Virus record (IMG/VR): IMGVR_UViG_3300027793_000052
Span: 124,001 to 188,000 of that record
Length of the DNA: 64,000 bases
Strand: one strand, 5' to 3'
The notes under the pieces: generated by a model
What the model was told of the DNA's origin: nothing
The model's database searches: none
What the model saw: the letters and a program-made list of their open reading frames with translations, nothing else
In this document: one piece after another, positions 20,153-59,089 of the stretch
Layout: every line of letters starts with the position of its first letter
Position numbering within the stretch: position 1 is the stretch's first letter
Position numbers and translations under genes: made by a program

Positions 20153-20181
20153 TTTACTTTAATACCTAATTATGGTATAAT
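20153..20181 (+). promoter_or_regulatory. Promoter for the Hef-like endonuclease
   Basis: TTTACT-N17-TATAAT with a TG extension, 8 nt before the ATG at 20189. Confidence 0.45.
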
Positions 20182-20188
20182 TATATTT

Positions 20189-31211: not shown

Positions 31212-32086
31212 AATTCGTTATTTATATTCGTATCAGTAATTCTAATTAATTTAATATTATTTTCTGTACAGTATTTATTTTTAATTTCATCCCTTTCTTT
31301 GGTTTTAATAAAATTTTTACCACTATGATCACCCCAATGAGGTTGAAAATGTTGATACCCATCATATTCAATACATACGTTGAGTTTTGGTAGATAAAAA
31401 TCGAACTTTAGAGGGAATTTATTTTTACAATCAGGAAAACTGTGTTGTTGTATATATTTAATTTTTTCTTCTTCTAAAATTTTTTTAATCCTCAGTTCAC
31501 CCTTAGATACATTACACATTTTACATCCAAAACCCTGTAAATGGCTATATGGTTTTTGTTCAAAAATACCATGATTTGGGCATATAATAAATACTTTTTT
31601 ATGTGAATTCACATAATCCACTAATGAATAGTCAAATTTATTATTATGTATTTTATTTGCTCTATCTATGAAAATATTAGTTGTTAGTTTTTGGTTATTA
31701 CTACAATGTGGGCACCCACATTTTTTCAATAGATGATCACACGATCTTTGTTCAAAAATACCATGATTTGGGCATATAATTTTTATTTTAGTAGAACAAC
31801 AATCAACATATTCAGATAAAGAATAATCGTACTTATTTTTATGTATTTTTTTAGCCTCACGGATAAAAACCTCTGTAGATAACTTTTTATTTTTAGCACA
31901 ATAAGGACATCCGTGTTTTTGTTTTATATGTGAACATGGACGTTGTTCGAAAACACCATGAATGTTACATATTATTTTAACTTTAGTATTTGTGTTAACG
32001 TAATCAACTAAAGAATAATCATACACATTATGGTGTATTTTATTTGCCTTATTTATGAAATCATATGTTGTTAATTTTTTAGGCAT
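31184..32086 (-). CDS. Free-standing putative homing endonuclease: 3 zinc-ribbon repeats plus PD-(D/E)xK (DUF559/Vsr-like) domain
   Basis: 3x YDYSLV.Y....KV.IICP.HG.F.Q.P..H....GCP.C; LKFDFYLPKLNVCIEYDGYQHF; likely start MPKK at 32086. Confidence 0.78.
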   Translation of the reverse strand: MPKKLTTYDFINKANKIHHNVYDYSLVDYVNTNTKVKIICNIHGVFEQRPCSHIKQKHGCPYCAKNKKLSTEVFIREAKKIHKNKYDYSLSEYVDCCSTKIKIICPNHGIFEQRSCDHLLKKCGCPHCSNNQKLTTNIFIDRANKIHNNKFDYSLVDYVNSHKKVFIICPNHGIFEQKPYSHLQGFGCKMCNVSKGELRIKKILEEEKIKYIQQHSFPDCKNKFPLKFDFYLPKLNVCIEYDGYQHFQPHWGDHSGKNFIKTKERDEIKNKYCTENNIKLIRITDTNINNELWLDQLRKK

Positions 32087-32115
32087 ATACATATAAATAT
32101 AAGGTAAATGGTTTT

Positions 32116-32217
32116 TTACCACCATAACCCAATTTTATTTGTACTATAACTTTCCTGAGTTATGCCTAAAAAACTTTCGGTATTTAATTTAACTTGTTTT
32201 TTTTGTGGTCTTCCCAT
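32116..32217 (-). pseudogene. 33-codon orphan N-terminus homologous to 30816..31211
   Basis: MGRPQKKQVKLNTESFLGITQESY vs MARPTKKKIELTKQSFQIVAQEAY, 11/24 identical. Confidence 0.7.
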
Positions 32218-33835: not shown

Positions 33836-34909
33836 TTATTTTTCTGTTTCTACATTATTTTCCACTTCTAACGGTAGTGAAGATTTTAATTCATTAATTC
33901 TATTTGTAAAGAATTTTTCATAAACTTCTTTTATTTTTGATTTTTGTTCTTCATAAGAGTAAGTATCTTTTTGTTTAGACATTTCTTCATATAATTCAGA
34001 AGGTTCACCATCTTCTAACCAAGCTTGAAAATAGTTAGCTATTAAATCAACAATCATCAATGGGTCATGTGTCCAAAGACCGTTTTTATCTGACATCCAT
34101 TCAGGTACCATGTTTGGTACTAACCCTAAAACGGGTACATTACATTTCATAGCTTCTAACGGAAATGTACCAAAAGAGGAATCCTTATCAATCCAAATAG
34201 CTAAACAGGATTCTGATAAAGATTTAGCAAAAGTTTCTCTAGGTAAACCTCTCATGTCGCGGAAAGAAACCCATTTTAAATGAGGGTATTTTAAATAAAA
34301 TGCCTTGTAAAGTTTAACTAAATCCCTTTGGTCACGAGTTGAAATCGCTATTATTGGTTTTTTTGGTTTATCTGAGGGTTTGAAGTATTTTGGTATACTT
34401 ACAGGAACTACTTCGGCTTTAATTTTTTTAGAAAACAAATTTTCAAGATATTCTTTTTGTTTCTCACTTGTTGTAATAACTTCTGTAATACCGTAATCAG
34501 ACCAACTTTTACCTGGCATTAACATTTCAAAAATGTAATCGTAAGATTGTGAAAATACTATTCTCTTAGAAGGTAAATTTAAAGTTTGTTCCATTACATT
34601 TGAAAATACTTCAGGTATGATTATAAAATCTTGTGGATTAACTTTTAATTGTTGAGCTTCAATTGACACGTGTGGTATTTCAGCGTAAACTTCACCTAAT
34701 GTGTTGGCTACTGAAACGTAATCATTTTTTTCATGTAAAATTTGAGCGTCATAACCTAAATCACGTAATATTTTAGCATGATCATAAATGTTGGCCAAAC
34801 TAGCGATTGGATTACCTTTGGTGTCCATTGTAAAAAAATAAATTTTAAATTGTTTGTTCTCTAAATTAGAGATTGCGTTCTTAACGACTTGTTTAGTGTT
34901 ATCTTCCAT
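33836..34909 (-). CDS. GT-B glycosyltransferase (GT4-like)
   Basis: SFGTFPLEAMKCNVPVLG (Ex7E-like motif region). Confidence 0.75.
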   Translation of the reverse strand: MEDNTKQVVKNAISNLENKQFKIYFFTMDTKGNPIASLANIYDHAKILRDLGYDAQILHEKNDYVSVANTLGEVYAEIPHVSIEAQQLKVNPQDFIIIPEVFSNVMEQTLNLPSKRIVFSQSYDYIFEMLMPGKSWSDYGITEVITTSEKQKEYLENLFSKKIKAEVVPVSIPKYFKPSDKPKKPIIAISTRDQRDLVKLYKAFYLKYPHLKWVSFRDMRGLPRETFAKSLSESCLAIWIDKDSSFGTFPLEAMKCNVPVLGLVPNMVPEWMSDKNGLWTHDPLMIVDLIANYFQAWLEDGEPSELYEEMSKQKDTYSYEEQKSKIKEVYEKFFTNRINELKSSLPLEVENNVETEK

Positions 34910-36788: not shown

Positions 36789-38363
36789 TTATTTATTATT
36801 ATTTAAGTGGTAATCTAACCAATAGTTATATGTTTTTAAATCGTTAGGTGTGCCCCAACAAATATAATCCTCAACCTCAAATACTTTTACGTTTAAATTA
36901 TCGTTAATATTTTGGTTCAATATATCGTCAACATAGAACTCACCGTTAGTTCTAACATTTTCTTTATAATTCTTATGTAAACCATCTATAAAATATTTAG
37001 CCTTCCTGAAAAACATAGTACCTATTATAGCGTGTGTTTTTAAAGGATTATCATATATAAATTTTTTACATGACACATGTTTTATATTATTATTATCATC
37101 TACATCCAACCAAGCGTATGCGTTAGGATTTACCTTACTTGTTTGATTGTTTCTAAAAGACCAAACTATAATGTCTATGGTTTCATCTTTTAACATCTCA
37201 TTACATATTTCTGTGTTATAATATATACCATTATCACACGCAGATATTAATATAGGGTTATCTAAATTAACATCTTTAAGACCTATTTCACAAGTACAAG
37301 CCTGACCTTCAGTAACACCATCAATACCTATAACATCAGAATACCTGTTAAAATTTTTCAAAACCTCATCTATACCATATTCTTGTATATGTTCATTTCT
37401 TACTATGAAAACATTTTTATCACAGTTAGGTAAGTTTTCTATTGCCTTTATGACCATAGGTTTATTATCTACAGTTATAAGTGGTTTTGGCAAACCATAA
37501 CCCTCCTCACTGAACCTACTACCGTTACCAGCCATTGGTAATATTAACGTGGTATTCTTTGGACAAGATATGTTTTTCATCTTAGGTTTTTTGAAGAAAT
37601 CGGACCAACTATTATATGTTTCCAAATCATAAGGTGTCCCCCATTGTAACATTTTGTTTATTTCAAATATTAAAACAGATAAACCATCACGAACTAACAG
37701 ATTATAAACCAAACTAACATAGAACTCACCTTTTATATTCACATTTAAATCGACTAATTCTTTGAAATATTTTTTTAAGATATTTAAATTCTTAAAATAA
37801 TAGGTTCCGTTAGAGGCATATTCATTCATTTTATTATTGGTGAATGGTTCCTTTTCTTTTATCTCTAATAATTCATTTTTTTTGTTAGTTTTACAAAAGG
37901 CATAATTATCATTACCTAACATATGTGGGTGAAATCCTGTATAACAAGGTATAGCACCGTCATAGTTGTTATTTCTAACATCATTCAAAAATTTATTATA
38001 ATCCCATACAGTACCGTAATCACAATAACTAACAATTATATCCCTATCATTCTCTAAATGTAAAAAATCCACAATTTGGTTTATAGCATCAACAGGGCCT
38101 TTCCTATCTTCTATAGATACTTCATATATTTTACAATTTGGTGATATGCTCTTAAGTATGTTTGACGTATTAGTTTCAGACAAATGTTTTTTATTACATA
38201 TAAAAATAACATCTTCTGGGTTATCGAATAATTCTACAACATGTTGAATTATTGGTTTACCGTCAACAACTATTAATGGTTTTGGTTCTAAATAACCGGC
38301 CTCAATAAATCTTTTACCAATACCAGACATGGGTATTATTATTTGTGGTTTTTTTGTTAACAT
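36789..38363 (-). CDS. Tandem (two-domain) sugar-phosphate nucleotidyltransferase
   Basis: IIIPMSGIGKRF..GY..PKPLI.VDGKP and LILPMAGNGSRF..GY..PKPLI.VDNKP; both halves end in WGTPxDL. Confidence 0.85.
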   Translation of the reverse strand: MLTKKPQIIIPMSGIGKRFIEAGYLEPKPLIVVDGKPIIQHVVELFDNPEDVIFICNKKHLSETNTSNILKSISPNCKIYEVSIEDRKGPVDAINQIVDFLHLENDRDIIVSYCDYGTVWDYNKFLNDVRNNNYDGAIPCYTGFHPHMLGNDNYAFCKTNKKNELLEIKEKEPFTNNKMNEYASNGTYYFKNLNILKKYFKELVDLNVNIKGEFYVSLVYNLLVRDGLSVLIFEINKMLQWGTPYDLETYNSWSDFFKKPKMKNISCPKNTTLILPMAGNGSRFSEEGYGLPKPLITVDNKPMVIKAIENLPNCDKNVFIVRNEHIQEYGIDEVLKNFNRYSDVIGIDGVTEGQACTCEIGLKDVNLDNPILISACDNGIYYNTEICNEMLKDETIDIIVWSFRNNQTSKVNPNAYAWLDVDDNNNIKHVSCKKFIYDNPLKTHAIIGTMFFRKAKYFIDGLHKNYKENVRTNGEFYVDDILNQNINDNLNVKVFEVEDYICWGTPNDLKTYNYWLDYHLNNNK

Positions 38364-38833
38364 AACCCCTTCTTTTTTAATTGATTTTCAGCATGTAATA
38401 CATAATCGGAACAAACAGCGTATACAACATCTTTGTTATAATCATCTATGTCTTGAATATTTAAAAGTGGTATTATTGTCGATTTACTAGATAAGTTCCT
38501 AGTTAAATCATGTACCCATATAAATTTATTACTAGTCAAAACATAAGGATCTGAATTATGACAAAAAAACATAAAACCACCAATTTCTATTAATTTATTG
38601 GCTGAATCTAAATCTTTACAATGAATCCATAATTTTTCTTTTCTCAATTTCAACCATGTTTCTGACACTTCATAATCTGGGGTGTCATGACCCAAATAAA
38701 ATTTATCACAGATATATCTTAAATCAATTTCAACCTCATAACCAGCAGAAATGGCTGTATCTATATAAGACGGTGAGTTTTCTCTATCTATCTTTGGTCC
38801 TTGTATATTACCCCTATGAGAAATTAACTTCAT
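38357..38833 (-). CDS. GDPD/PLC-like phosphodiesterase
   Basis: ISHRGN..EN, VEIDL, LGHD, WIHCK, AVCSDY. Confidence 0.72.
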   Translation of the reverse strand: MKLISHRGNIQGPKIDRENSPSYIDTAISAGYEVEIDLRYICDKFYLGHDTPDYEVSETWLKLRKEKLWIHCKDLDSANKLIEIGGFMFFCHNSDPYVLTSNKFIWVHDLTRNLSSKSTIIPLLNIQDIDDYNKDVVYAVCSDYVLHAENQLKKKGLC

Positions 38834-39123
38834 ATTTCTTCTATTCTTAATGTTTTATCATCGATAAACAAATCGTAATAAGGTTTATTAACATTCAATT
38901 CGTGGTGTTTAGCACCCCATTCTAATAATTGTTTTTTAGTTAATTCATACCAATTTATTTGTGTTCTACTACCACGTGCTGTCCAATAAACTATAGTATA
39001 ACCTTTATCATATAATTTATTAATCTTATCTATATTTTCTGTTATTGGTTTTGCGTTGAAATAATTTCTTGGTGAGGGTGTCTCACAAATAGTTTCATCT
39101 ATATCCACGTATATAACTTTCAT
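38830..39123 (-). CDS. Capsule-biosynthesis-type HAD phosphatase
   Basis: YVDIDETIC, YWTARG, KP.YDLFIDDK. Confidence 0.8.
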   Translation of the reverse strand: MKVIYVDIDETICETPSPRNYFNAKPITENIDKINKLYDKGYTIVYWTARGSRTQINWYELTKKQLLEWGAKHHELNVNKPYYDLFIDDKTLRIEEI

Positions 39124-39818
39124 GTTAAATTTTCTTGTCTATATTTTTCTTGCTTATCCTTCAATAAATCTATAACCTGTTTTTTTGTTAAAAAATTAGA
39201 ATAATTGGTGTTTTGTATAAAAACCTCGGCAGATTTTTCACAAATTTCTGATGATATTAAACACTCTTCGATGTTTTTACCACAAGTGATTATGCCGTGA
39301 TTTTGTAACAATATGAGTTTTGGGAAATATCCCTCCTTTTTAATGAAGTTCTCGACATATTTTTTAACCATTATGGTTAATTCATCACCAGGTTTAACGT
39401 ATGGTATTAAACAAGATTTACCACCGTTAAATACTACCTGATCTGGAAATAATCTATATTTAGCAAATGTTTCAGAGTGTGTACTACATAATATTTTTAA
39501 TGTATTTACCGGGTGAGTGTGTGATACAAAATTAATATCATCAAAACTCAACAAGTATGTATGGAAACCTAACTCCATACTACCTTTTTTATTTAAATTA
39601 GATATTTGTTTACCTTCTGAGTCGAAATCAACTAAATCATCCTCAGACAAATTAGATAGTTTAGTGCCACTAGCTTTTATCACTATCAAATAATTTTGTG
39701 GTGTTTTTATCTTGGTTGAAACGTTTCCTTCGACACCTACACAAAACTTAGATACTTTTTTAGACAATTCTAACAATTTTATTTTATTCTCAAACATACC
39801 AAATATTACCAATTTCAT
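39120..39818 (-). CDS. Class II aldolase/epimerase (adducin-like)
   Basis: GVEGNVS, IKASG, SMELGFH, VSHTHP, LLQNHGII. Confidence 0.8.
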   Translation of the reverse strand: MKLVIFGMFENKIKLLELSKKVSKFCVGVEGNVSTKIKTPQNYLIVIKASGTKLSNLSEDDLVDFDSEGKQISNLNKKGSMELGFHTYLLSFDDINFVSHTHPVNTLKILCSTHSETFAKYRLFPDQVVFNGGKSCLIPYVKPGDELTIMVKKYVENFIKKEGYFPKLILLQNHGIITCGKNIEECLISSEICEKSAEVFIQNTNYSNFLTKKQVIDLLKDKQEKYRQENLT

Positions 39819-41038
39819 TCACCATTGTAAATAGTTGTGATTAAATCTTTAACATTAAGAGTCCATTCAGAATTTAAACCGTTATCTAATGGTTTACAAT
39901 ATTTTTTATTTAAAATTTTATTTTCATATTTTGTTTGATTATTCCACCCTGCTACAAAATTTTTAGAATAACTTATAGTTAGTTCATCTTCAGATACATC
40001 AATAATTTCACCAATAACATCATTACACTTAACTCTCATATATTTTTTAAATAAATCGTTAGATACATGTGATGTTTCTGTGAAATATGACACATTAACA
40101 TTACTGAATGAGTATTTAAACCTGTTATTAACGTCTAAGAATGTTGGTGATATTATTGATAATACTTTTGTTTGTGGTTTAGAAAATAGAACGTTACACA
40201 TACCACCACCAATTGAACCAACCACATATTCTACTTGTGAAAATAACAATATCTTCTCAACGGTAGTTAAATTTTCGGTGAAAACCTCTACAAATCCTTG
40301 TTTAACTAGAGACTCTACTAACTCATCCTCATTGATTAATTTCCTTCTTGTGGTATAATTAGTACCTATATTGGTGAAGTCGTTATGCATCCAACTTCTT
40401 CTAGATACATATATTTTTTTAGGTTGATTATTATAATCCACAACGGATTTGGTGACTTTACCTACTATGTGTTTATATAATTGGTAAACTTCATACCTTG
40501 GTGGTAGATTTGAATCTATACCGTGAGTATATGAATTTGATATGTAAATTTCTTTATAGACAGTGTTTGAATCACAAATAACTACATCCCCCACAACATC
40601 AATATCTAATAAATTTAAAAATTCTAAAACAAATGGGTAAAATTTATTATTATTTTCAGCGGGGTAGTTCATTAATAATTTTATACTGGGTATTTCTTTT
40701 TTAATAAATTTATAACTCATTAAATAAGGTAAAGTATCATATATAAAATGGTAGTAATTATCTGTATTATATACAAAATAAAAAACAGGTGTATTAAGTA
40801 CGGTGGTTTTTACGGTGTCATTTATACTGTAGTTCTCTTGGGTGGTAACATCTTTTAGAGACATTATCTTCTCATCCATTGGGTTTATTACATTACTTTC
40901 TTTTTTTAATAAACAATTAGGGTAGTAAAGGTTTTGTCCGATTAAACTTACATCCGTTATTTTATATAAATTAATTTCCCTATTGTTACGGTCTTTTTTG
41001 TGAATGTTTTTATATAAAAAATTACTATCTAAAAACAT
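39815..41038 (-). CDS. Glycosyltransferase family 61 (DUF563)-like
   Basis: NYYHFIYDTLP, KKIYVSRR, RKLINEDEL, VVGSIGGGMCNVLF. Confidence 0.78.
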   Translation of the reverse strand: MFLDSNFLYKNIHKKDRNNREINLYKITDVSLIGQNLYYPNCLLKKESNVINPMDEKIMSLKDVTTQENYSINDTVKTTVLNTPVFYFVYNTDNYYHFIYDTLPYLMSYKFIKKEIPSIKLLMNYPAENNNKFYPFVLEFLNLLDIDVVGDVVICDSNTVYKEIYISNSYTHGIDSNLPPRYEVYQLYKHIVGKVTKSVVDYNNQPKKIYVSRRSWMHNDFTNIGTNYTTRRKLINEDELVESLVKQGFVEVFTENLTTVEKILLFSQVEYVVGSIGGGMCNVLFSKPQTKVLSIISPTFLDVNNRFKYSFSNVNVSYFTETSHVSNDLFKKYMRVKCNDVIGEIIDVSEDELTISYSKNFVAGWNNQTKYENKILNKKYCKPLDNGLNSEWTLNVKDLITTIYNGE

Positions 41039-41766
41039 TAGAAACCCTTTTTATACATATAAGCTGTGGGTGCAATCCAGTTTGTACTTTTTAAACTAAA
41101 ATCTATACCTTTTTCTTTTAAAAACTTCTCTACACCTTTACTTTCCGTGAATTTATGGTATTCAAATTCATCAAACAAAATTACGCCACCAGGTAAAATT
41201 CTGTCCCAAAGATATTTTAAAGCAAAATAAGTGGGTCTATCTAAATCAACATCTATATATAACATTGAAATTCTAAAACCAGGATTTTCTTCTAAAAATC
41301 TTGGTATTGATGTCTCTACATCACCTTTTATTAATTCGTATTTATCGGTAGATATTTTAGTACCCAATAATCTACCTTTCACTGATTCCAAAGATAGGTC
41401 ATCTACATTAACTCTATTGTATACTATATTCATAGATTCTTTATCTAATTTACTATCTTTATTTAAAATTTCATCGGCCTCAACAGTACCAAAAATATCA
41501 AATCCTAATACTTTTTTATTTGAGTTTGGGCAATAAACTTCTATAAATTTTGAAAATGTGGCAATACCCGAACCTTTAAACACCCCTACCTCTACTATAT
41601 CACCAGGAATATCTTTAATATTTAAAAAGTGTTGGAATCTATGTAACAGTTTACCAACTAGCTTAGTATCTTCTGAAAATATAAAATCATTAAATGATTT
41701 ATAAATTTCATCTTTTGGGTTATTTTTTGTATTCTTATTTGTTATATCTATTATCGTATTTTTCAT
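41038..41766 (-). CDS. TylF/MycF-family sugar O-methyltransferase
   Basis: PGDIVEVGVFKG, GFDIF, LIKGDV, LYIDVDL..PT, GGVILFDEF. Confidence 0.85.
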   Translation of the reverse strand: MKNTIIDITNKNTKNNPKDEIYKSFNDFIFSEDTKLVGKLLHRFQHFLNIKDIPGDIVEVGVFKGSGIATFSKFIEVYCPNSNKKVLGFDIFGTVEADEILNKDSKLDKESMNIVYNRVNVDDLSLESVKGRLLGTKISTDKYELIKGDVETSIPRFLEENPGFRISMLYIDVDLDRPTYFALKYLWDRILPGGVILFDEFEYHKFTESKGVEKFLKEKGIDFSLKSTNWIAPTAYMYKKGF

Positions 41767-41767
41767 A

Positions 41768-42493
41768 TTATTTTTTTATAATAAAAATTATTTCTGAATA
41801 TCGACCTTTTTCTAAATTAAATTCTAATATGTTATCATTTAAATATTCGATCTCATCTTTTGCCATAAAATCTGATTCTATCTTACCAGTCTTTAGGTAA
41901 TTTTCTGCCATCCATAAAGTAGTTTTATCTGTACTAGGACCCTGATTATACCTTCCATCTCTTGATGTAAATAAATCTTCAATTACAAATAATCCACCAG
42001 ATTTTAAATGTTTAAACATAAAACCTAAAAAAATTTGTTGCCCTGCCATAGTATGTGGACCGTCATCAATTATAATATCATAGTCAGAGCCAAATGTATT
42101 TATTACATGGTCTAACCCTATTTTTCCCCCTTCCATGTTGGTGTGGATATTTTTTAAAAAAGTATTTTCATAGTTTTGAAAATCACTGCTTGTTCTTATT
42201 TCACAATTACAACAAGTAGTTTTTATATTTTTATAATGTCTATCCAAAACAGTGTGGTCTACTAAATCTAACCCATATATTGTTGCATCGGGGTAATATT
42301 CCGACCAAGTTCTTAATGAGGCACCACAAGTATCTATTTGTGGAACTGCTGTAGTAGAATAAATTCCAAGTTCTAATATTTTATTTGGGGACTTAATATA
42401 CTTATCAAAATATTTTTGATAATGTTGGGTATACTGATGATCTAAACTACTTTTATCAGTATTGTGTTTAACAGCTAATTCGTCTATTGTCAT
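41768..42493 (-). CDS. Class I SAM-dependent methyltransferase (sugar O-methyltransferase-like)
   Basis: TDKSS..HQY..Y, ILELG, DIIIDDGPH, GGLFVIED. Confidence 0.8.
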   Translation of the reverse strand: MTIDELAVKHNTDKSSLDHQYTQHYQKYFDKYIKSPNKILELGIYSTTAVPQIDTCGASLRTWSEYYPDATIYGLDLVDHTVLDRHYKNIKTTCCNCEIRTSSDFQNYENTFLKNIHTNMEGGKIGLDHVINTFGSDYDIIIDDGPHTMAGQQIFLGFMFKHLKSGGLFVIEDLFTSRDGRYNQGPSTDKTTLWMAENYLKTGKIESDFMAKDEIEYLNDNILEFNLEKGRYSEIIFIIKK

Positions 42494-42506
42494 ATTGTTT
42501 TTTTTA

Positions 42507-43241
42507 TTAAGAGTGTTCGTATTTTAAAGCCCAAGAATGATCGTTTGGGTATGACGTATAACCATATTTCTCTACAATCATAGGGAAATCACGTTCAAAA
42601 AAATATAAATCAAATTTATGTTCAACACCTAATGTAAGTAGATTTTTTTGAAAAAAGTCTTCAATAACATCATTTAGGAAATTTTTTATAATAGAACCTT
42701 TTATTGTGTAAAAAGTATAATGACCAGTTAAATCTGAACATCTATTAAAATGATTACCAATTAATATGTGTTTTAAATTATTTTCAACATAATCTTTATT
42801 CTTAGGTAGTTGCCTTATCATCCAAGGCATAAATAAACCTAAACGATCATTATTATCAAATAAAGTTTCTATATCCTTTCTTTTTGAGTGGAATATTTTA
42901 TATACTGAACTTCTTAACGTACTACCAGATGTGACACCTTTTGTATGCATAAACCATAATAATTTATGTTCTAAACCAATTTTTTTGTATAATTTTAAAG
43001 CCGTTTGATATGCGGAGGCGTCTGATTTGATCACCTTATCATCTTCTGTGATTTCATAATATATATTCAATCTATCTTTATAAGATTCTATGGTTTCAAC
43101 CCACTCTCTACAAGATGGATTAATCCCTATGAAAATATCACAATCTTTAAAATGTTCACATATTTTATCTAACATTTCTATACCAATGTGTAACCTATCA
43201 ACTGTAGGTACATAGGTCGCGAATATTACGGCATCTTTCAT
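42507..43241 (-). CDS. Hypothetical glycan-biosynthesis protein (RgpF-like HTKG motif)
   Basis: WFMHTKG, FFERDF; context. Confidence 0.45.
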   Translation of the reverse strand: MKDAVIFATYVPTVDRLHIGIEMLDKICEHFKDCDIFIGINPSCREWVETIESYKDRLNIYYEITEDDKVIKSDASAYQTALKLYKKIGLEHKLLWFMHTKGVTSGSTLRSSVYKIFHSKRKDIETLFDNNDRLGLFMPWMIRQLPKNKDYVENNLKHILIGNHFNRCSDLTGHYTFYTIKGSIIKNFLNDVIEDFFQKNLLTLGVEHKFDLYFFERDFPMIVEKYGYTSYPNDHSWALKYEHS

Positions 43242-43244
43242 ACT

Positions 43245-44663
43245 CTAATTATAATTAACGTTCATTATAAAATAAAGTATATAATCGTAGTAATTACCGA
43301 CCTTAAAATGTGGTTTTAAGTTTTTAAACCCACAATAAGTATCGAATGTTAGTACATTAAATTTAATATTTGTTTCCCTAATAAATGGTATACCATCACC
43401 CATCAATTCATCTACCACTTTATCTATGTTGTATTTTTTATTTATACATAATTTCAATTTCAGACCATCATTTTCATGAAAATTTATTATAATATCAGAT
43501 AAATCTTTCTGTGGTAGAATGTATTTTTCATAATCTACACGTCTACCCTCAATCTGTTTTAAAACTTTATCCATACTATAACCACGTTCTACAACATCTC
43601 TTTGTATTTTCCACTTTTTTTTAAGTTCACTATCAGTATCTATGAATATTTTTAAATTGTATATACTATCATTTTGTACATATAAACTGTGTAAACCACA
43701 AACTATTATATTATCGGATGATTCTATATACTCTTTTTCTGTAAACTTACCTGTTTTGTGATCATAATCAACTTGATATATGTCTTTACCTATTTTTAAA
43801 TCAAAGATGTCGTCGTTCATTTTGGTGATGAAATTAGCTTCTGGGTTTAAATGTGTTAAGTCTTTCCATTTATCATGACCCCTTTCCCATTTATGATATC
43901 TATCACACTCCAACATTAGAGAATTTGAAAAATATTTTTTTAGTAAATTACCTAGTGTAGTCTTACCAGAACCAGAATCACCAGCAATGGCGAAAACATT
44001 ACACATAGATAAAATAACCATATAATCTATATGTAATTCTTTGTACTTTATACCATATTCCACCAAATACCAATATAATAATGTTTCAGACACATTACCA
44101 TATTTTTTTGTCATATAATCTAAATGAGTATATAAAGAAAAATATTCATTCATAACTTTAGAGTTACCGTAAGCTATTATATCACATAGATATTTGTCAT
44201 CTATTTTAGTTAATTTATTTTTATCTATCTTACTGTCCTTAGGTATGTAAACAACATCTTTCAATGGATCATCTATTATTAATCCATCAGATATTAAATC
44301 CAAATCTGGTCTATATTTTATAACCAAATCATAGTCACCAAATTTAGTTTCATTATCTATTTTAATTTGGTTAAGTTTGAAAAATTTGAACCACTTATTA
44401 TATAAACTATTTTTCTCTTTATCTTCAAACCATTCTATATTTGGTTCATATATTAAAGCTATAGGGTTCAACATTTTAGAAATGTAACCTATCTCTTGTG
44501 ATTCGTTTATGTTGTTTAAATATTTGTCCTCTTCTGATTCATTTTTAGTTATATGCATATAAACATCTACCCTGTCAAATTTATCAATAATTTTTTCCTT
44601 GATATTGGGTATGTTGTTTTTAAAACTTCTTAAGTATCCAGAAATTAATAGAGCAACTTTCAT
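43245..44663 (-). CDS. Fusion of a putative glycosyltransferase and a phosphoribulokinase/uridine kinase family domain
   Basis: N-terminal ALLISGYLRSF...YDLVIKYRPDL...CDIIAYG; C-terminal AGDSGSGKTT, DRYHKW, NPEAN, YDHKTGKF, RDVVERG. Confidence 0.78.
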   Translation of the reverse strand: MKVALLISGYLRSFKNNIPNIKEKIIDKFDRVDVYMHITKNESEEDKYLNNINESQEIGYISKMLNPIALIYEPNIEWFEDKEKNSLYNKWFKFFKLNQIKIDNETKFGDYDLVIKYRPDLDLISDGLIIDDPLKDVVYIPKDSKIDKNKLTKIDDKYLCDIIAYGNSKVMNEYFSLYTHLDYMTKKYGNVSETLLYWYLVEYGIKYKELHIDYMVILSMCNVFAIAGDSGSGKTTLGNLLKKYFSNSLMLECDRYHKWERGHDKWKDLTHLNPEANFITKMNDDIFDLKIGKDIYQVDYDHKTGKFTEKEYIESSDNIIVCGLHSLYVQNDSIYNLKIFIDTDSELKKKWKIQRDVVERGYSMDKVLKQIEGRRVDYEKYILPQKDLSDIIINFHENDGLKLKLCINKKYNIDKVVDELMGDGIPFIRETNIKFNVLTFDTYCGFKNLKPHFKVGNYYDYILYFIMNVNYN

Positions 44664-44666
44664 GTA

Positions 44667-45476
44667 TTAACTAAATGGTCTACCACAATTTCTTAGATTA
44701 TATTTGTTAACTATTTCTGTATACTCTTCAGCTGCATCAATATATGTGTGACCAAACTCACATTTCCATGTACCATCAAATCTCAACAATCTACGATAAT
44801 GTGTTATGTGTATGTATTTGTAAAAAGGTAAACTATTCATATAACCACAACGTAATGTGTGGTTTACTGAATATAAATTATAAATCTTAAATTTTGTACA
44901 ATAATTTTGTACATCACCATATTCTATATCTCTATAAGTCCTACCCTTAAATGTTTCAAATACTTCAATAAGTGAATTTCTATTCCATATAGATGGGTTA
45001 ACATTATAAATATAAGTATCGGGATTTGTATGTAACCCTAAACACATATCATCATTATCTATTTCATTAAACTCAATATGAGGCCATTCTTCAACTTTTT
45101 TATCTTTTAAAATTTTTATAAACCTACCTGATTGACCCCCATTTGGTTGTAAATCAATCCTATCAATAGATTCTAATTCCATTAATTGGATAAATTTATC
45201 TAAAATAGATTCGTCACGTTTTAAAGGGACATCAACTTCATGTGTGAATAATATATATTTAGAGTCTATTTTACTTAAAGCCTCAGAAACTTTATTGGTG
45301 TAAGGCAGAGAATCGTCATAAAATAAAACTTTTTTAAATTTAGAATATATATCATGTTCATGATTACTTTTATTTATCAAAAGTATTTTATTATCAACAT
45401 TTTCTAAATAGTCGTAAGTTATTTTTAGTAAATCTAAAAACTCTGTGTGTGAGTATATTACATAAGTTAACTCCAT
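44667..45476 (-). CDS. Putative glycosyltransferase
   Basis: GT-A-like N-terminus; likely start MELTY at 45476; context. Confidence 0.5.
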   Translation of the reverse strand: MELTYVIYSHTEFLDLLKITYDYLENVDNKILLINKSNHEHDIYSKFKKVLFYDDSLPYTNKVSEALSKIDSKYILFTHEVDVPLKRDESILDKFIQLMELESIDRIDLQPNGGQSGRFIKILKDKKVEEWPHIEFNEIDNDDMCLGLHTNPDTYIYNVNPSIWNRNSLIEVFETFKGRTYRDIEYGDVQNYCTKFKIYNLYSVNHTLRCGYMNSLPFYKYIHITHYRRLLRFDGTWKCEFGHTYIDAAEEYTEIVNKYNLRNCGRPFS

Positions 45477-45477
45477 A

Positions 45478-46203
45478 TTATTTATATTTTTCTTTTGTAG
45501 GTAATCTTTGTAAAGGAGCATCTCTAGATTCATCATTTATATCTATAGATTCACCAATAAAAGCAAAATCACAAGATTTTCTGTCATGATTTAGTTTTAC
45601 ACAATTTGGTTCGTATCTAAAATACTCGTCGTGTATTAACGCATCATTTACAATATTTGGATAAATAACCTGACCAAGAAATATTTGGTCTTGGTTTCTT
45701 ATACTATCTTTTTTTGATTCTGGTGTGTTATAAATATGATTAAATTTATTTTTTAAAAATTCATCAATGTAAACATTTATTTTTTTTATAAATTCGGTTT
45801 TTTTTGCCCCCCACATACCACCATTAATTCTGTAATGATGACCTATAGGGTGGTCTCTAATTATAGAGTAATTATAATTTGAATTTTCAAACTCTCTTAT
45901 TGCTATAACATCTCTTTCAAAAACTCTAGAATCACAATCTCTAGACATCATTATAGATACGTTATCATAAGATATTGGTAAAAACCTCCAAAACATCCCT
46001 GTAAAGCTCTCATTATGGTCCATAATTTTTATTATGCCACCGTTTTTTTCTATTTGTTCAATAATATTTTTATTAACATTATCAGCACAAAAAAACATAG
46101 AATTCCAATCAGGTAAAAGTTCTTTTACCGCTTTCGCATTTTTAATGGCCCCAACAGAATATAAAGGGTCATCACCATATAAACAAAAAGATATTATTTT
46201 CAT
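45478..46203 (-). CDS. Putative glycosyltransferase (SRDCDSR/GGMWG family)
   Basis: ISFCLYG, MFWRF, SRDCDSR (DxD), IRDHP, NGGMWG, DQIFL. Confidence 0.65.
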   Translation of the reverse strand: MKIISFCLYGDDPLYSVGAIKNAKAVKELLPDWNSMFFCADNVNKNIIEQIEKNGGIIKIMDHNESFTGMFWRFLPISYDNVSIMMSRDCDSRVFERDVIAIREFENSNYNYSIIRDHPIGHHYRINGGMWGAKKTEFIKKINVYIDEFLKNKFNHIYNTPESKKDSIRNQDQIFLGQVIYPNIVNDALIHDEYFRYEPNCVKLNHDRKSCDFAFIGESIDINDESRDAPLQRLPTKEKYK

Positions 46204-48417: not shown

Positions 48418-49110
48418 TTATACTATAATATTTATACCATTCTGTGATATGTAATTAGTTAACTCCATTCTACCACTATACATGTGTGCAAAAGTGTTTT
48501 CATTAAATTTTTTACACATAGATAATGATAAAAATGAACTACTTATTATATGAAACTCACTACACATTTCTATAGTATATAATAAATCAAAAAAATTGAA
48601 GTCTTTGGTTATTACGAAATTTGGTAAATTATTAGATATTTTACCTCTATCTATAACCCTATTGGTCTCTACATCCTCATGTATCAGGTTAAACTTTTCT
48701 GACCCCACAATACTAATTATTTTTTCATAAACAATATTTTCTTTAATAAGATCACGTTCTATTTTAAAAAATTCTTTTTTAACTTTAGGATCCATACCCA
48801 CTTTTAAATAAAAAGTATCATCAAAATACTGTCCGTAATCAAACTGGGTTTGACCTATCAGATATGAAGATACTACATGGTCATAATGATTTTGCTCTAT
48901 ATGGTTAAACATACCTTCATCGTTAATAATATCCACAACTTTAATTTTTTCGGTATCTCTAAACATAAATTTAACGTTATTAAAATTATGTGTTTTAGAA
49001 GGTACATATATATCATAGTTTGGGTTATCCAATGACAGTTTTCTAATCATACCATTATGGACTATATTATCACCCATACCCAAGTGTTGTTTTATAAAAA
49101 ATTTTCCCAT
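48418..49110 (-). CDS. Putative GT-B glycosyltransferase
   Basis: HLGMGDNIVHNG, FHIISSSF; context. Confidence 0.5.
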   Translation of the reverse strand: MGKFFIKQHLGMGDNIVHNGMIRKLSLDNPNYDIYVPSKTHNFNNVKFMFRDTEKIKVVDIINDEGMFNHIEQNHYDHVVSSYLIGQTQFDYGQYFDDTFYLKVGMDPKVKKEFFKIERDLIKENIVYEKIISIVGSEKFNLIHEDVETNRVIDRGKISNNLPNFVITKDFNFFDLLYTIEMCSEFHIISSSFLSLSMCKKFNENTFAHMYSGRMELTNYISQNGINIIV

Positions 49111-59070: not shown

Positions 59071-59089
59071 AATTAATTTGGGTGCTATT

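What the first reader, a model, noticed from the sequence alone, without database searches (positions are those of the whole stretch)
36789..44663. Unusual activated-sugar/polyol-phosphate sub-pathway: tandem NTase, GDPD-like, HAD, class II aldolase and a GT-PRK/uridine-kinase fusion
Seen: adjacent, overlapping genes encode a two-domain nucleotidyltransferase, a phosphodiesterase, a HAD phosphatase and a class II aldolase/epimerase. A little further upstream in the operon is a glycosyltransferase-like domain fused to a phosphoribulokinase-family P-loop kinase (DRYHKWER, NPEAN, YDHKTGKF). Inference: a pathway that phosphorylates or isomerises a pentulose or other sugar, activates it as an NDP-sugar or NDP-polyol and transfers it, possibly a rare building block. 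A GT fused to a PRK-like kinase in a phage is not something I recognise as characterised.
Basis: inference. Interest (0 to 1): 0.6.

Follow-up and report, generated by a model that had tools for sequence, protein, structure and literature searches.

The report
Viral pentulose-phosphate sugar-activation gene module
A common freshwater jumbo phage carries a tightly packed set of genes, shared with marine cyanophages and probable giant viruses, that most likely turns ribulose phosphate into a nucleotide-activated rare sugar for a virus-made glycan; no part of it has been tested, and its kinase has been read elsewhere as a photosynthesis gene.

Summary
On the minus strand, 36789-45536 is one overlapping operon in a T4-like, 318-kb freshwater phage. 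It encodes a tandem nucleotidyltransferase, a 158-aa GDPD-like protein, a 97-aa HAD phosphatase, a Zn class II aldolase-fold enzyme, GT61, two methyltransferases, and a GT-A-fold domain fused to a phosphoribulokinase (PRK)-type kinase.

The set is not a one-off. Of 37 non-redundant viral loci with enough flank, 37 have a HAD and GT61, 36 a GDPD-like protein, and 35 each the tandem NTase and the aldolase-like gene.

A second variant, mostly on 'GVMAG' contigs, fuses the parts differently: HAD::aldolase and GDPD-like::NTase. Its HAD domain best matches the haloarchaeal ribulose-1,5-bisphosphate 5-phosphatase. That enzyme works next to a FucA-like ribulose-1-phosphate aldolase.

Cultured cyanophages S-SM2 and Bellamy carry the module without the kinase.

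Best reading (inferred, about 0.4): Ru5P -> RuBP -> Ru1P -> remodelling -> NDP-linked pentulose -> transfer by the glycosyltransferases. This is the heptose-pathway logic applied to a ketopentose. The product and the role of the GDPD-like protein are unknown.

It is a new variant of viral nucleotide-sugar synthesis, and it argues against reading such viral PRK hits as Calvin-cycle genes.

The parts
36789..38363 (-). Tandem nucleotidyltransferase (NTase2x), 524 aa, with two GlmU/RmlA/IspD-like NTase domains (about residues 5-255 and 270-520).
   Evidence: PF12804 and PF00483 are above cut-off. NCBIfam hits to GlmU, RmlA and AglF-type NTases fall on both halves. Both halves keep the G-x-G-x-R, K-P-L and Asp motifs across 27 homologues. 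It matches phrog_3980 (unknown function) at E 4e-115. The PDB match is 4evw, a V. cholerae NDP-sugar pyrophosphorylase. It is present in 35/37 non-redundant loci.
38357..38833 (-). Short GDPD-like (PLC-like phosphodiesterase fold) protein, 158 aa.
   Evidence: No Pfam or NCBIfam hit. HRG, EN, ExD and HD motifs are invariant. The model has pLDDT 82.7, and its top Foldseek hits are GDPDs 1v8e, 7e0v and 4oec at E 5e-4 to 5e-3. The profile hit to 1zcc is only E 0.88. A GDPD-like protein of either type is present in 36/37 loci. In variant B a different HR-N/ExD/HD domain takes its place and is often fused to the N-terminus of the NTase.
38830..39123 (-). Minimal HAD phosphatase, 97 aa, of the EcbF/BcbF 'capsule biosynthesis phosphatase' type.
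   Evidence: TIGR01689 scores E 9.5e-9, below its cut-off. HAD motifs I-IV are invariant. The profile matches PDB 9iqw at E 1e-16 and 1xpj at 1e-5. It is mutually exclusive with the HAD_2 domain of variant B: 61 versus 22 loci, none with both. More than 7,900 close homologues exist in metagenomes.
39120..39818 (-). Zn-dependent enzyme of the class II aldolase / epimerase / dehydratase fold (AldII), 232 aa.
   Evidence: PF00596 scores 87.5 bits. E82, H100, H102 and H174 align with the FucA and AraD metal ligands. D126 aligns with AraD D120, and the C-terminal Y226 aligns with AraD Y229 and FucA Y209. The best NCBIfam models are the L-Ru5P 4-epimerase subfamily, 3-oxo-tetronate-4-P decarboxylase, FucA and MtnB, all far below cut-off. 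It is missing in two lineages, L015 and L022/23.
39815..41038 (-). GT61-family glycosyltransferase, 407 aa.
   Evidence: PF04577 scores 67 bits against a cut-off of 27. It is present in 37/37 non-redundant loci and in S-SM2 and Bellamy.
41038..41766 (-). TylF-type O-methyltransferase, 242 aa. It is an accessory part.
   Evidence: PF05711 scores 50 bits. It lies beside the kinase or aldolase gene in 19 of 87 loci.
41768..42493 (-). Second methyltransferase-like protein, 241 aa. It is lineage-specific.
   Evidence: It has a weak Methyltransf_24 hit at E 0.005. Homologues appear in only 5 loci.
42507..43241 (-). Unknown 244-aa protein, lineage-specific.
   Evidence: No family hit. It is found only in the near-identical contigs.
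44019..44663 (-). N-terminal domain of the fusion protein (residues 1-215). It has a GT-A / nucleotide-diphospho-sugar-transferase fold and is DUF7796-like.
   Evidence: Modelled pLDDT is about 90. VIA Z is 10-12.7 to GT6, GT25, GT2 and Mnn9, and equally to GlmU and IspD. ESM Atlas matches DUF7796 and 'capsular polysaccharide biosynthesis protein' clusters at TM 0.84-0.86. PF25072 matches homologues only at 26-28 bits and does not match the window protein. It matches phrog_13607. It stands alone as a 250-300-aa protein in cyanophages.
43245..44018 (-). C-terminal PRK-type P-loop kinase (residues 216-472) of the fusion protein.
   Evidence: PF00485 scores 114.9 bits. NF005655 phosphoribulokinase scores 170.8 bits against a cut-off of 236, and uridine kinase 79.8 against 180. 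The profile scores E 4e-40 to 1e-38 against PRK structures 9qko, 6hzk, 6kev and 5b3f, versus 3e-12 for uridine kinase. VIA Z is 14.6 over residues 219-471. The motifs D254-x-x-H257-x-x-x-R261, Y300-x-H302 and K352-x-x-R355-D356-x-x-x-R360 are invariant.
44667..45536 (-). Conserved 289-aa protein of unknown function (unk289), possibly GT-A-like.
   Evidence: No family or PDB hit. It is present in 34/37 non-redundant loci. The Atlas shows viral-only clusters, and the nearest named cluster is GT2 at 0.94, which is a lead only.
48418..49110 (-). 230-aa unknown protein. Its relatives (244-315 aa) sit inside the module elsewhere and are fused to the GDPD-like protein in one locus.
   Evidence: BLAST links it to 244-315-aa ORFs next to the HAD and GDPD-like genes in many loci. 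L033:4093-5472 is a fusion of this family with the GDPD-like protein.

Best explanation
This is a conserved viral module for making and transferring an activated ketopentose, or a close derivative of one. It starts from the pentose-phosphate pool.

Proposed order of steps:
1. The PRK-type domain phosphorylates ribulose 5-phosphate, or a very similar pentulose 5-phosphate, at C1 to give the 1,5-bisphosphate.
2. The HAD phosphatase removes the 5-phosphate to give ribulose 1-phosphate. The net effect is to move the phosphate from C5 to C1. The ADP/GDP-heptose pathway uses the same kinase, HAD phosphatase and nucleotidyltransferase logic.
3. The Zn class II aldolase-fold enzyme remodels the ketose 1-phosphate. 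I favour an AraD-like epimerisation that changes which pentulose is made, because two lineages do without this gene. Cleavage to DHAP plus glycolaldehyde is the alternative.
4. The tandem nucleotidyltransferase, working with the GDPD-like protein, links the sugar phosphate to a nucleotide.
5. GT61, the GT-A-fold domain fused to the kinase, the conserved 289-aa protein and the methyltransferases install and decorate the unit on a glycan made by the surrounding island, which holds about ten glycosyltransferase-like genes.

What is shown: the gene set, its conservation, the fusions, the folds and the active-site motifs.
What is inferred: every substrate, the order of steps, the product, and the target (virion or host envelope).
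For: - The operon is tight, with overlapping genes.
- The set co-occurs strongly. Among 37 non-redundant PRK-fusion loci with at least 7 kb on both sides, a HAD is present in 37, GT61 in 37, a GDPD-like protein in 36 and NTase2x in 35. The aldolase-like gene is in 33 by HMM. Two more carry the divergent variant-B form, and only L015 and L022/23 truly lack it.
- Three independent fusions tie the parts together: GT-A::PRK, HAD_2::AldII and GDPD-like::NTase2x. A fourth links an unk230-like protein to the GDPD-like protein.
- Two unrelated HAD types never co-occur (61, 22 and 0 loci). The same holds for the two GDPD-like types (61, 18 and 0). This suggests one phosphatase role and one diesterase role, each filled in two ways.
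- The kinase is PRK-like in sequence, fold and substrate-site motifs.
- The variant-B HAD domain best matches NF053830, ribulose-1,5-bisphosphate 5-phosphatase, at E 1e-45 and 152-156 bits. In haloarchaea that enzyme is in an operon with a FucA-like Ru1P aldolase, and RuBP -> Ru1P -> DHAP + glycolaldehyde was shown biochemically (PMC9700705).
- The two best NCBIfam models for the S-SM2 aldolase-like protein are both ribulose-phosphate enzymes.
- The cyanophages S-SM2 and Bellamy, plus 14 related contigs (GC 0.36-0.43), have the whole module with the GT-A-fold protein standing alone and no kinase. All kinase-bearing loci have GC 0.20-0.35. This fits a Calvin-cycle host supplying RuBP.
- Nucleotide-linked ketoses joined through a non-anomeric phosphate have precedent: CDP-6-fructose (PMC10918830).
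- The phage genome has no RuBisCO.
- The stretch is found, 100% identical, in contigs of four freshwater metatranscriptome libraries.
Against: - No enzyme was assayed.
- Every specific family model is below its curated cut-off: PRK 170.8 against 236, RuBP phosphatase 156 against 330, Ru1P aldolase 28-50 against 300.
- NF053830 also rings weakly in all 14 control genomes. In L002 the broader TIGR02253 model scores slightly higher.
- The window's own HAD is a different, minimal type. Its closest solved relative is a 'capsule biosynthesis protein', and HADs in comparable systems dephosphorylate sugars after transfer to the glycan (PMC12096443).
- The position that aligns with PRK Arg67 is not conserved.
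- The kinase substrate-binding region (residues 248-327) is poorly modelled.
- The scheme gives the GDPD-like protein and the second NTase domain no defined job.
- No reductase or isomerase is conserved in the module.
- One high-GC locus (L108) does carry a stand-alone kinase. From my own knowledge, many cyanophages carry CP12, which inhibits host PRK.
- Hosts of the kinase-bearing viruses are unknown.
- RNA-library contigs can derive from carried-over DNA.
Confidence: 0.4

Rival explanations
1. The chemistry happens on the glycan. The fusion protein is a glycosyltransferase joined to a kinase that phosphorylates a sugar already on the glycan. Alternatively, a sugar phosphate is transferred and the small 'capsule biosynthesis' HAD then removes the phosphate from the glycan, as in PRPP-dependent ribofuranosylation. 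The NTases would simply supply ordinary NDP-sugars.
For: - The mini-HAD's nearest relatives are capsule-locus phosphatases: TIGR01689 and PDB 9iqw.
- Cj1432 and Hib Bcs3 show transfer of ribose-5-P followed by HAD dephosphorylation on the polymer (PMC12096443).
- The same GT-A-fold domain is fused to a sulfotransferase in other viral proteins. That suggests a 'transfer then modify' enzyme.
- The GT-A-fold domain persists when the kinase is absent.
Against: - It does not explain the near-universal aldolase-fold enzyme, or its fusion to a HAD that resembles a free RuBP phosphatase.
- The kinase keeps the PRK small-molecule site motifs.
- It does not explain the loss of the kinase specifically in cyanophages.
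Confidence: 0.2
2. The module is a catabolic auxiliary pathway. [quoted passage not shown] Its position next to glycan genes would be incidental.
For: - A PRK-like kinase, an RuBP-phosphatase-like HAD and a FucA-like enzyme form exactly that series.
- Phages commonly carry pentose-phosphate-pathway genes (PMC3037559).
Against: - The three genes are almost never found without the tandem NTase, the GDPD-like protein and GT61.
- The GDPD-like protein is fused to the NTase, and the kinase to a GT-A-fold domain.
- Two lineages lack the aldolase but keep everything else.
- The route spends ATP to make DHAP, which every host already has in abundance.
Confidence: 0.12
3. The kinase is a Calvin-cycle auxiliary gene that boosts host CO2 fixation. 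Metagenome surveys have read viral PRK hits this way.
For: - It is PRK-type by sequence and fold.
- Published viromes list PRK among photosynthesis-related auxiliary genes (PMC10732071, PMC11421388).
Against: - It is always embedded in the glycan module and fused to a GT-A-fold domain.
- The genome has no RuBisCO.
- The cyanophage versions of the module are the ones that lack the kinase.
- The P-loop Cys of the redox-regulated PRK pair is a Ser here: GDSGSGKT against GDSGCGKS.
Confidence: 0.03
4. The kinase is a uridine/cytidine kinase for nucleotide salvage, as IMG annotates it. The neighbouring genes would make a heptose nucleotide, as the S-SM2 annotation implies with 'phosphoheptose isomerase' and 'heptose kinase/adenylyltransferase'.
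For: - JGI names for homologues are 'uridine kinase'.
- The S-SM2 and Bellamy records carry heptose-pathway labels.
Against: - Uridine-kinase models and structures score far worse than PRK.
- The cyanophage 'phosphoheptose isomerase' ORFs are the 100-aa HAD (A4 profile, E 1e-50), so that label is an annotation error.
- No SIS-domain isomerase or GHMP/PfkB heptose kinase belongs to the conserved core.
Confidence: 0.04

Closest known systems
Haloarchaeal non-carboxylating pentose bisphosphate pathway: RuBP 5-phosphatase plus ribulose-1-phosphate aldolase (Sato et al. 2022, PMC9700705)
   Same: A HAD-IA phosphatase sits next to a FucA-like Zn aldolase. Variant-B viruses fuse the two, and their HAD domain has NF053830 as best model. 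RuBP is the implied common intermediate.
   Different: - The viruses make RuBP with a PRK-type kinase, not through ribose-1,5-bisphosphate isomerase.
- Scores are far below the equivalog cut-offs.
- The window phage uses an unrelated 97-aa HAD.
- The viral set is tied to nucleotidyltransferases and glycosyltransferases, so it is probably anabolic.
ADP-/GDP-heptose pathway: kinase -> 1,7-bisphosphate -> HAD phosphatase GmhB -> nucleotidyltransferase (from my own knowledge)
   Same: The same three-step logic moves a phosphate to the position used for nucleotide activation. It is likewise encoded beside glycosyltransferases.
   Different: - The enzyme families differ: a PRK-type P-loop kinase rather than PfkB/GHMP, and no SIS isomerase.
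- The substrate would be a ketopentose, whose C1 phosphate is not anomeric.
NDP-ketose and polyol routes: CDP-6-fructose -> CDP-6-glucitol in C. jejuni HS:5 (PMC10918830); CDP-xylulose -> CDP-arabinitol and CDP-ribitol (from my own knowledge)
   Same: GT-A-fold (IspD-like) nucleotidyltransferases activate a ketose phosphate through a non-anomeric phosphate, for use in surface glycans.
   Different: - Those pathways use the existing 5- or 6-phosphate and a reductase.
- Here there is no conserved reductase, the phosphate is first moved, the NTase is tandem, and a GDPD-like partner is present.
PRPP-dependent ribofuranosylation with an in-line HAD phosphatase: Cj1432 and Hib Bcs3 (PMC12096443)
   Same: A pentose phosphate enters a glycan, and a small capsule-type HAD removes a phosphate.
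   Different: - No PRPP-type phosphoribosyltransferase domain was detected.
- That system has no aldolase-fold enzyme and no NTase or GDPD-like partner.
'LPS gene clusters' of large T4-like cyanophages near phoH (Sullivan et al. 2010, PMC3037559)
   Same: S-SM2 genes SSM2_204-209 are the same module without the kinase, at 43-65% identity. The window module also abuts phoH.
   Different: - Those clusters were described only as possibly functional or as 'stuffer DNA'.
- The module, its fusions and the PRK link were not recognised.
- Several genes in those records are mis-labelled.
Calvin-cycle phosphoribulokinase (class II PRK: 6hzk, 6kev, 9qko, 5b3f)
   Same: The fold matches over the whole kinase (Z 14.6). 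The Walker A motif, the D-x-x-H-x-x-x-R, Y-x-H and K-x-x-R-D-x-x-x-R-G motifs are all kept.
   Different: - It is fused to a GT-A-fold domain.
- It scores below the NCBIfam PRK cut-off.
- It lacks the P-loop regulatory Cys.
- It sits in a glycan setting, in viruses without RuBisCO.

Membership tests
Phosphoribulokinase (PRK; PF00485, NF005655) | PRK/uridine-kinase family domain above the Pfam gathering score | tested here: met
   PF00485 scores 114.9 bits against a cut-off of 22, over residues 223-394.
Phosphoribulokinase (PRK; PF00485, NF005655) | Score above the curated NCBIfam PRK cut-off | tested here: not met
   NF005655 scores 170.8 bits against a cut-off of 236. NF011997 scores 43.6 against 362.
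Phosphoribulokinase (PRK; PF00485, NF005655) | Walker A motif plus the catalytic Asp and the His/Arg residues that bind the sugar phosphate (roles recalled from the PRK literature) | tested here: met
   GDSGSGKT starts at residue 228. D254, H257, R261, Y300, H302, K352, R355, D356 and R360 are invariant in 36 homologues and align with the PRK motifs in 6hzk and 9qko. The position equivalent to Arg67 is not conserved.
Phosphoribulokinase (PRK; PF00485, NF005655) | ATP-dependent phosphorylation of Ru5P to RuBP | not testable with these tools
   This needs an enzyme assay.
Uridine/cytidine kinase | Score above the curated Udk cut-offs, and closer to Udk than to PRK | tested here: not met
   NF004018 scores 79.8 against 180, and TIGR00235 scores 69.2 against 220. 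The profile scores E ~3e-12 against Udk structures, versus 4e-40 for PRK.
Glycerophosphodiester phosphodiesterase (GDPD, PF03009) | Match to the family profile | tested here: not met
   There is no Pfam or NCBIfam hit at E<=1. The profile scores only E 0.88 against PDB 1zcc.
Glycerophosphodiester phosphodiesterase (GDPD, PF03009) | Catalytic HR(G)...EN...ExD...HD motifs and a (beta/alpha)-barrel fold | tested here: inconclusive
   The motifs are invariant. Top Foldseek hits are GDPDs, but at E 5e-4 and TM 0.39. At 158 aa the protein is too short for a full 8-stranded barrel.
HAD phosphatase superfamily | Motifs I (DxDxT), II (T/S), III (K) and IV (DD) | tested here: met
   D7-x-D9-x-T11, T48, K80 and D88-D89 are invariant in 25 homologues.
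EcbF/BcbF capsule biosynthesis phosphatase (TIGR01689) | Score above the curated cut-off | tested here: not met
   It scores 35.3 bits against a cut-off of 162. The profile does match the related PDB entry 9iqw at E 1e-16.
Ribulose-1,5-bisphosphate 5-phosphatase (NF053830) | Equivalog-level match | tested here: not met
   The window genome has no match. Variant-B HAD domains score 119-156 bits against a cut-off of 330. That is the best model in 2 of the 3 tested.
Class II aldolase/adducin fold (PF00596) | Domain above the gathering score, with the His3 (+Glu/Asp) Zn site and the phosphate-binding GN-S / SG motifs | tested here: met
   It scores 87.5 bits against a cut-off of 22.2. G31-N32-x-S34, S50-G51, S80-x-E82, H100, H102 and H174 are conserved and align with FucA and AraD.
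Ribulose-1-phosphate aldolase (NF053831), FucA, AraD, MtnB | Equivalog-level match to any one of these | tested here: not met
   All are far below cut-off: 28-52 bits for the window protein, and 49.7-61 bits for the S-SM2 homologue.
Sugar-phosphate nucleotidyltransferase (PF00483, PF12804) | NTase domain above cut-off with the G-x-G-x-R signature; here in both halves | tested here: met
   PF12804 scores 49.2 against 27, and PF00483 scores 45.4 against 21.2. Both halves keep the signature and the Lys and Asp residues. No equivalog model is reached, so the nucleotide and sugar are unknown.
GT61 glycosyltransferase (PF04577) | Domain above the gathering score | tested here: met
   It scores 67 bits against a cut-off of 27.
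DUF7796 (PF25072) | Match to the family profile | tested here: inconclusive
   The window protein has no hit at E<=1. Homologues P0105 and P0070 score 28.4 and 26.1 bits against a cut-off of 27. The Atlas structural match to DUF7796 clusters has TM 0.84.

The most novel reading that the evidence does not exclude
Viruses of both bacteria and eukaryotes share a previously unrecognised route to a nucleotide-linked ketopentose of the ribulose or xylulose type, made through ribulose-1,5-bisphosphate.

- A co-opted PRK makes RuBP where the host has no Calvin cycle. Cyanophages instead tap the host's own RuBP pool.
- The GDPD-like partner that is fused to the nucleotidyltransferase does new chemistry. 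It might cyclise the NDP-pentulose to a 1,2-cyclic phosphate donor, or it might form a pentulose-phosphate diester on the glycan.
- The result would be virus-specific pentulose or pentulose-phosphate residues on virions or on infected cells.
Probability: 0.15. Interest if true: 0.85.

Novelty: new variant of a known kind. Interest (0 to 1): 0.62.

Why it matters
If the reading is right, it matters in four ways.

1. RuBP, the Calvin-cycle intermediate, would gain a second biological use as a precursor of a glycan building block. This would also define a new way of making an activated ketopentose.

2. Viral 'PRK' hits in metagenomes are currently counted as carbon-fixation auxiliary genes (PMC10732071, PMC11421388). 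At least for this abundant family they would need re-reading.

3. The same seven-function module occurs in T4-like jumbo phages, in cultured cyanophages and in probable giant viruses. It is rebuilt with different fusions and with non-homologous HAD and diesterase parts. That makes it a clear case of modular exchange of glycan chemistry across the virosphere.

4. The module gives the long-unexplained 'LPS clusters' of large cyanophages a concrete, testable function. Two cultured phage-host systems, S-SM2 and Bellamy, are available for glycan analysis and gene deletion. The enzymes could also serve for making rare sugar nucleotides.

Tried and rejected
- **Complex prediction.** I did not resend those rows by any route. 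A second job used only the window's own NTase2x and GDPD-like proteins and gave 'no answer', score 0.00. This is not evidence either way.
- **Phage or giant virus?** I tried to classify variant-B contigs by searching their records for NCLDV and gp23 capsid families. The records are not held. The giant-virus assignment therefore rests only on the IMG/VR 'GVMAG' names and a few neighbours: an EsV-1-7 repeat protein, a Bro-N/T5orf172 protein and an acyl-CoA dehydrogenase.
- **Two GDPD-like types.** A profile-profile comparison gave only 20% probability over 24 columns. Their homology is suggested by motifs, not shown.
- **Literature.** Searches for PDB codes 9IQW and 9QKO, and for PRK together with giant virus and glycosyltransferase, found nothing useful.
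- **Bacterial genomes.** The first single-sequence scan found nothing. The alignment-based scan found two MAG/SAG contigs. It used only two peptide patterns, so absence from bacteria is not proven.
- **HAD word search.** It returned only close viral orthologues, more than 7,900 of them, and so gave no bacterial context.
- **Readings considered and rejected:**
  - Uridine-kinase salvage, a Calvin-cycle auxiliary gene and the heptose pathway (see the rival explanations).
  - A methionine-salvage MtnB/MtnC-like pair. The fusion order and the HAD subfamily do not fit, and there is no MtnK or MtnA.
  - CDP-ribitol synthesis. No reductase is conserved in the core.

Full report
**What is in the window**

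The window is bases 124001-188000 of a 317,983-bp IMG/VR viral record judged 96% complete. It encodes a T4-type portal, a gp23-type capsid protein, a terminase large subunit with an intein, PolB, dUTPase and PhoH. GC content is about 28%. It is therefore a T4-like jumbo phage. Its capsid protein is only distantly related to those of cultured phages.

A single minus-strand gene array runs from about 63.5 kb down to 26 kb. Between about 33 and 57 kb it holds roughly ten glycosyltransferase-like genes, a DegT aminotransferase and a PglD-like acetyltransferase.

The finding sits inside this island. Reading in the direction of transcription, the genes are:
- a conserved 289-aa unknown (44667-45536);
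- the GT-A-fold::PRK fusion (43245-44663);
- a 244-aa unknown;
- two methyltransferase-like genes;
- GT61 (39815-41038);
- the class II aldolase-fold gene (39120-39818);
- the 97-aa HAD (38830-39123);
- the 158-aa GDPD-like gene (38357-38833);
- the tandem nucleotidyltransferase (36789-38363);
- phoH.

Neighbouring genes overlap by 1-7 nt or are separated by at most 13 nt.

**Checking each protein**

*The kinase half of the fusion.*
- It matches PF00485 at 114.9 bits.
- Among NCBIfam models, phosphoribulokinase NF005655 scores best: 170.8 bits, E 4e-50, cut-off 236. Uridine kinase scores 79.8 bits.
- A profile built from 36 homologues matches solved PRKs (9qko, 6hzk, 6kev, 6gve, 5b3f) at E 4e-40 to 1e-38. 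It matches uridine kinases only at about 3e-12.
- The AlphaFold model superposes on a PRK over residues 219-471 with Z 14.6.
- The invariant residues D254, H257, R261, Y300, H302, K352, R355, D356 and R360 fall in the PRK motifs D-x-x-H-x-x-x-R, Y-x-H and K-x-x-R-D-x-x-x-R-G. From the PRK literature, as I recall it, these carry the catalytic Asp and the residues that hold the phosphate of Ru5P.
- The P-loop reads GDSGSGKT, whereas redox-regulated PRKs have a Cys in it.

*The N-terminal half of the fusion.*
- It is confidently modelled, with pLDDT about 90.
- It has the GT-A / nucleotide-diphospho-sugar-transferase fold, Z 10-12.7.
- It resembles true glycosyltransferases (GT6, GT25, GT2, Mnn9, Mimivirus R699) and nucleotidyltransferases (GlmU, IspD) about equally.
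- In the ESM Atlas it matches viral 'DUF7796' and 'capsular polysaccharide biosynthesis protein' clusters at TM 0.84-0.86.

*The aldolase-fold protein.* It keeps the Zn ligands and the phosphate-binding motifs of FucA and AraD. An Asp (D126) aligns with AraD D120, and a C-terminal Tyr (Y226) aligns with AraD Y229 and FucA Y209. No specific subfamily model comes close to its cut-off.

*The HAD.* It is a minimal but complete HAD. Its closest solved relative is annotated as a capsule biosynthesis protein.

*The 158-aa protein.* It has no family hit. It does carry the GDPD catalytic motifs, and its model retrieves GDPDs first, though weakly.

*The nucleotidyltransferase.* Both of its halves look catalytically competent.

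**Is the association real?**

The fusion protein has more than 1,200 full-length homologues in metagenomes. I fetched 80 IMG/VR loci plus several metagenome contigs that encode it. I called ORFs on them and searched with the window proteins and with profiles.

After collapsing to 54 clusters at 90% identity, I kept the 37 clusters with at least 7 kb on both sides. The counts were:
- HAD: 37/37
- GT61: 37/37
- GDPD-like protein: 36/37
- tandem NTase: 35/37
- 289-aa unknown: 34/37
- aldolase-like gene: 33/37 by HMM, and 35/37 once the divergent variant-B copies are counted. Only two lineages truly lack it.

PhoH, the TylF-type methyltransferase and other glycosyltransferases are frequent but optional neighbours.

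**Two builds of the same module**

Variant A includes the window. It has separate genes for the aldolase, the 97-aa HAD and the 158-aa GDPD-like protein.

Variant B is mostly on contigs that IMG/VR names 'GVMAG', and it has some giant-virus-like neighbours. It differs in two ways:
- One roughly 550-aa protein carries a HAD_2 domain fused in front of the aldolase domain.
- A different roughly 200-aa domain carries HR-N, ExD-R and HD motifs. It is either a separate gene or fused to the N-terminus of the tandem NTase, giving a protein of 737-746 aa.

The two HAD types never occur together: 61 loci, 22 loci, none with both. All remaining loci are truncated, or carry a stand-alone HAD_2. The two diesterase-like types behave the same way: 61, 18 and none. 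I read this as one phosphatase role and one diesterase-like role, each filled in two different ways.

Together with the GT-A::PRK fusion, these fusions tie all the parts into one process.

**The key lead to function**

The variant-B HAD domain has as its best NCBIfam model NF053830, ribulose-1,5-bisphosphate 5-phosphatase. It scores E 1e-45 and 152-156 bits in two of the three proteins tested. The cut-off of 330 is not reached, and the broader TIGR02253 model is a close second or, in the third protein, first.

That enzyme was discovered in haloarchaea. There it is in an operon with a FucA-like, Zn-dependent ribulose-1-phosphate aldolase. The sequence RuBP -> Ru1P -> DHAP + glycolaldehyde was shown with purified proteins (PMC9700705).

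So a PRK-type kinase, an RuBP-phosphatase-like HAD and a FucA-like enzyme, encoded side by side and partly fused, form a chemically continuous series around RuBP and Ru1P.

The pattern of kinase, then HAD phosphatase, then nucleotidyltransferase is also the logic of the bacterial heptose-nucleotide pathway (my own knowledge). Nucleotide-linked ketoses joined through a non-anomeric phosphate are known: CDP-6-fructose (PMC10918830) and CDP-xylulose (from memory).

**A natural experiment**

The tandem NTase belongs to phrog_3980. It is found at 44-45% identity in the cultured cyanophages S-SM2 and Bellamy.

In those phages the order is NTase2x, then a GT61-like gene, the aldolase-like gene, the 100-aa HAD, the GDPD-like gene and a stand-alone GT-A-fold/DUF7796-like protein. 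There is no kinase. No PRK-like gene turns up anywhere in the phage collection at E<=1e-5, apart from one weak match on an unrelated 5.9-kb faecal-sample phage contig.

Of the 17 IMG/VR loci fetched with the S-SM2 aldolase (two of them S-SM2 and Bellamy themselves; GC 0.36-0.43), 16 show the same kinase-less arrangement. One (L108) has a stand-alone 202-aa PRK-type gene. All kinase-bearing loci have GC 0.20-0.35. Another metagenome contig shows the kinase as a separate gene inside an otherwise typical module.

The kinase is therefore a detachable feeder step. It is absent exactly where the known hosts, Synechococcus, make RuBP themselves. That is what the RuBP hypothesis predicts.

There are caveats. 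The hosts of the kinase-bearing viruses are unknown. L108 is an exception. And many cyanophages suppress host PRK through CP12 (my own knowledge).

**Best explanation and its limits**

I commit to the following scheme, at about 0.4 overall and somewhat higher for the first two steps:
1. Ru5P is phosphorylated to RuBP by the PRK domain.
2. RuBP is converted to Ru1P by the HAD.
3. Ru1P is optionally remodelled by the aldolase-fold enzyme. I favour epimerisation, because two lineages dispense with the gene. Cleavage is possible.
4. The product is activated with a nucleotide by the tandem NTase together with the GDPD-like protein.
5. The unit is transferred and methylated by GT61, the GT-A-fold domain, the 289-aa protein and the methyltransferases.

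What is shown is anatomy, conservation, folds and motifs. Every substrate is inferred.

The weakest points are these:
- The window's own HAD is of a capsule-phosphatase type, which in comparable systems acts after transfer (PMC12096443).
- All specific family scores are below their cut-offs.
- NF053830 is not very selective.
- The GDPD-like protein and the second NTase domain have no defined role.

The main rival, at 0.2, places the kinase and phosphatase steps on the glycan. A purely catabolic reading gets 0.12. Calvin-cycle and nucleoside-salvage readings get 0.04 or less each. They fit the context poorly, and the genome has no RuBisCO.

**Distribution and expression**

Near-identical DNA occurs in public runs from 17 studies, mainly freshwater metagenomes. 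It is also assembled, with no differences, from four freshwater metatranscriptome libraries. That is consistent with transcription but does not prove it, because DNA can be carried over into such libraries.

In prokaryotic species genomes, the pattern scan found the fusion on only two MAG/SAG contigs. One of them carries a lactate permease and so may be truly bacterial.

**Relation to the literature**

- Sullivan et al. (PMC3037559) noted large 'LPS gene clusters' near phoH in the biggest cyanophages. They left open whether these are functional or 'stuffer DNA'.
- Two virome papers list viral PRK among photosynthesis-related auxiliary genes.
- I found no paper that describes this module, its fusions or its link to RuBP.

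- Read laying was given 5,901 letters, within the 6,000-letter limit.
- No alternative genetic code was used.
- No step needed referral.

Noticed in passing
window 2549-5707 (+): The terminase large subunit (PHROG terminase families, residues about 6-206) is interrupted by an intein with a LAGLIDADG homing-endonuclease domain (Intein_splicing, LAGLIDADG_3).
   Followed up: partly
window 10084-11220 (+) and 11696-14005 (-): The phage encodes a glutamine-synthetase-like protein (Gln-synt_C/N) and a 769-aa protein with a poly(A) polymerase / CCA-adding head domain. No tRNA genes occur in the window.
   Followed up: no
window 20111-21793 (+): Directly after the capsid gene lies a 560-aa protein that combines a C2H2/Ros-MucR-type zinc finger, an REase_MTES_1575 nuclease domain and a Mom-like domain. 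All hits are near or below cut-off.
   Followed up: no
window 31184-32125 (-), 57967-59130 (-), 33836-34909 (-): Two DUF723 / treble-clef zinc-finger ORFs, which look like homing endonucleases, sit inside the long operon. The GT1-like gene at 33836-34909 shows a weak LAGLIDADG_2 match in its middle, so it may carry an inserted endonuclease.
   Followed up: no
window 18300-20069 (+): The gp23-type capsid protein is 589 aa. Against most relatives it aligns in two pieces covering only about 55% of its length. This suggests a large N-terminal or internal insertion compared with T4-like capsid proteins.
   Followed up: no
L090 (S-SM2) 12303-12614 and 13944-14273; L091 (Bellamy) 12297-12605: ORFs annotated 'phosphoheptose isomerase' in these cyanophage records are actually the roughly 100-aa HAD phosphatase of the module (A4 profile, E 2e-29 to 2e-50). 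The label looks like an annotation error that has been propagated.
   Followed up: yes
L033:4093-5472: A 459-aa protein fuses a member of the unk230-like family (window 48418-49110) to the GDPD-like protein. Members of that 244-315-aa family lie between the HAD, GDPD-like and NTase genes in many loci.
   Followed up: partly
L058:16263-17639 (-) and 20125-21462 (-): A variant-B contig encodes, near the module, a protein with an ADP-ribosyltransferase exoenzyme domain and a protein made of EsV-1-7 cysteine-rich repeats. The repeats are typical of eukaryotic large DNA viruses.
   Followed up: no
L007 (Emcibacteraceae SAG contig) 66-7261: A possibly bacterial copy of the module exists next to an L-lactate permease. 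Its kinase fusion is longer (686 aa, with an N-terminal part of about 400 aa). Its HAD_2 stands alone, and its aldolase-like protein is closest to the aldolase domain of bifunctional rhamnulose-1-P aldolase/dehydrogenases.
   Followed up: partly
window 38800-44700: The same DNA, essentially without differences, is present in public runs of 17 studies (freshwater, sediment and 'fungus' metagenomes, 2017-2024) and in six freshwater metatranscriptome libraries. This phage is therefore widespread and recurrent.
   Followed up: partly
H34/H35, Synechococcus phage S-SKS1, about 38750-39529: In S-SKS1 a single-domain relative of the nucleotidyltransferase lies next to a 3,4-dihydroxy-2-butanone-4-phosphate synthase, which is another enzyme that uses Ru5P. 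Several other cyanophages pair a single NTase with a HAD hydrolase.
   Followed up: no
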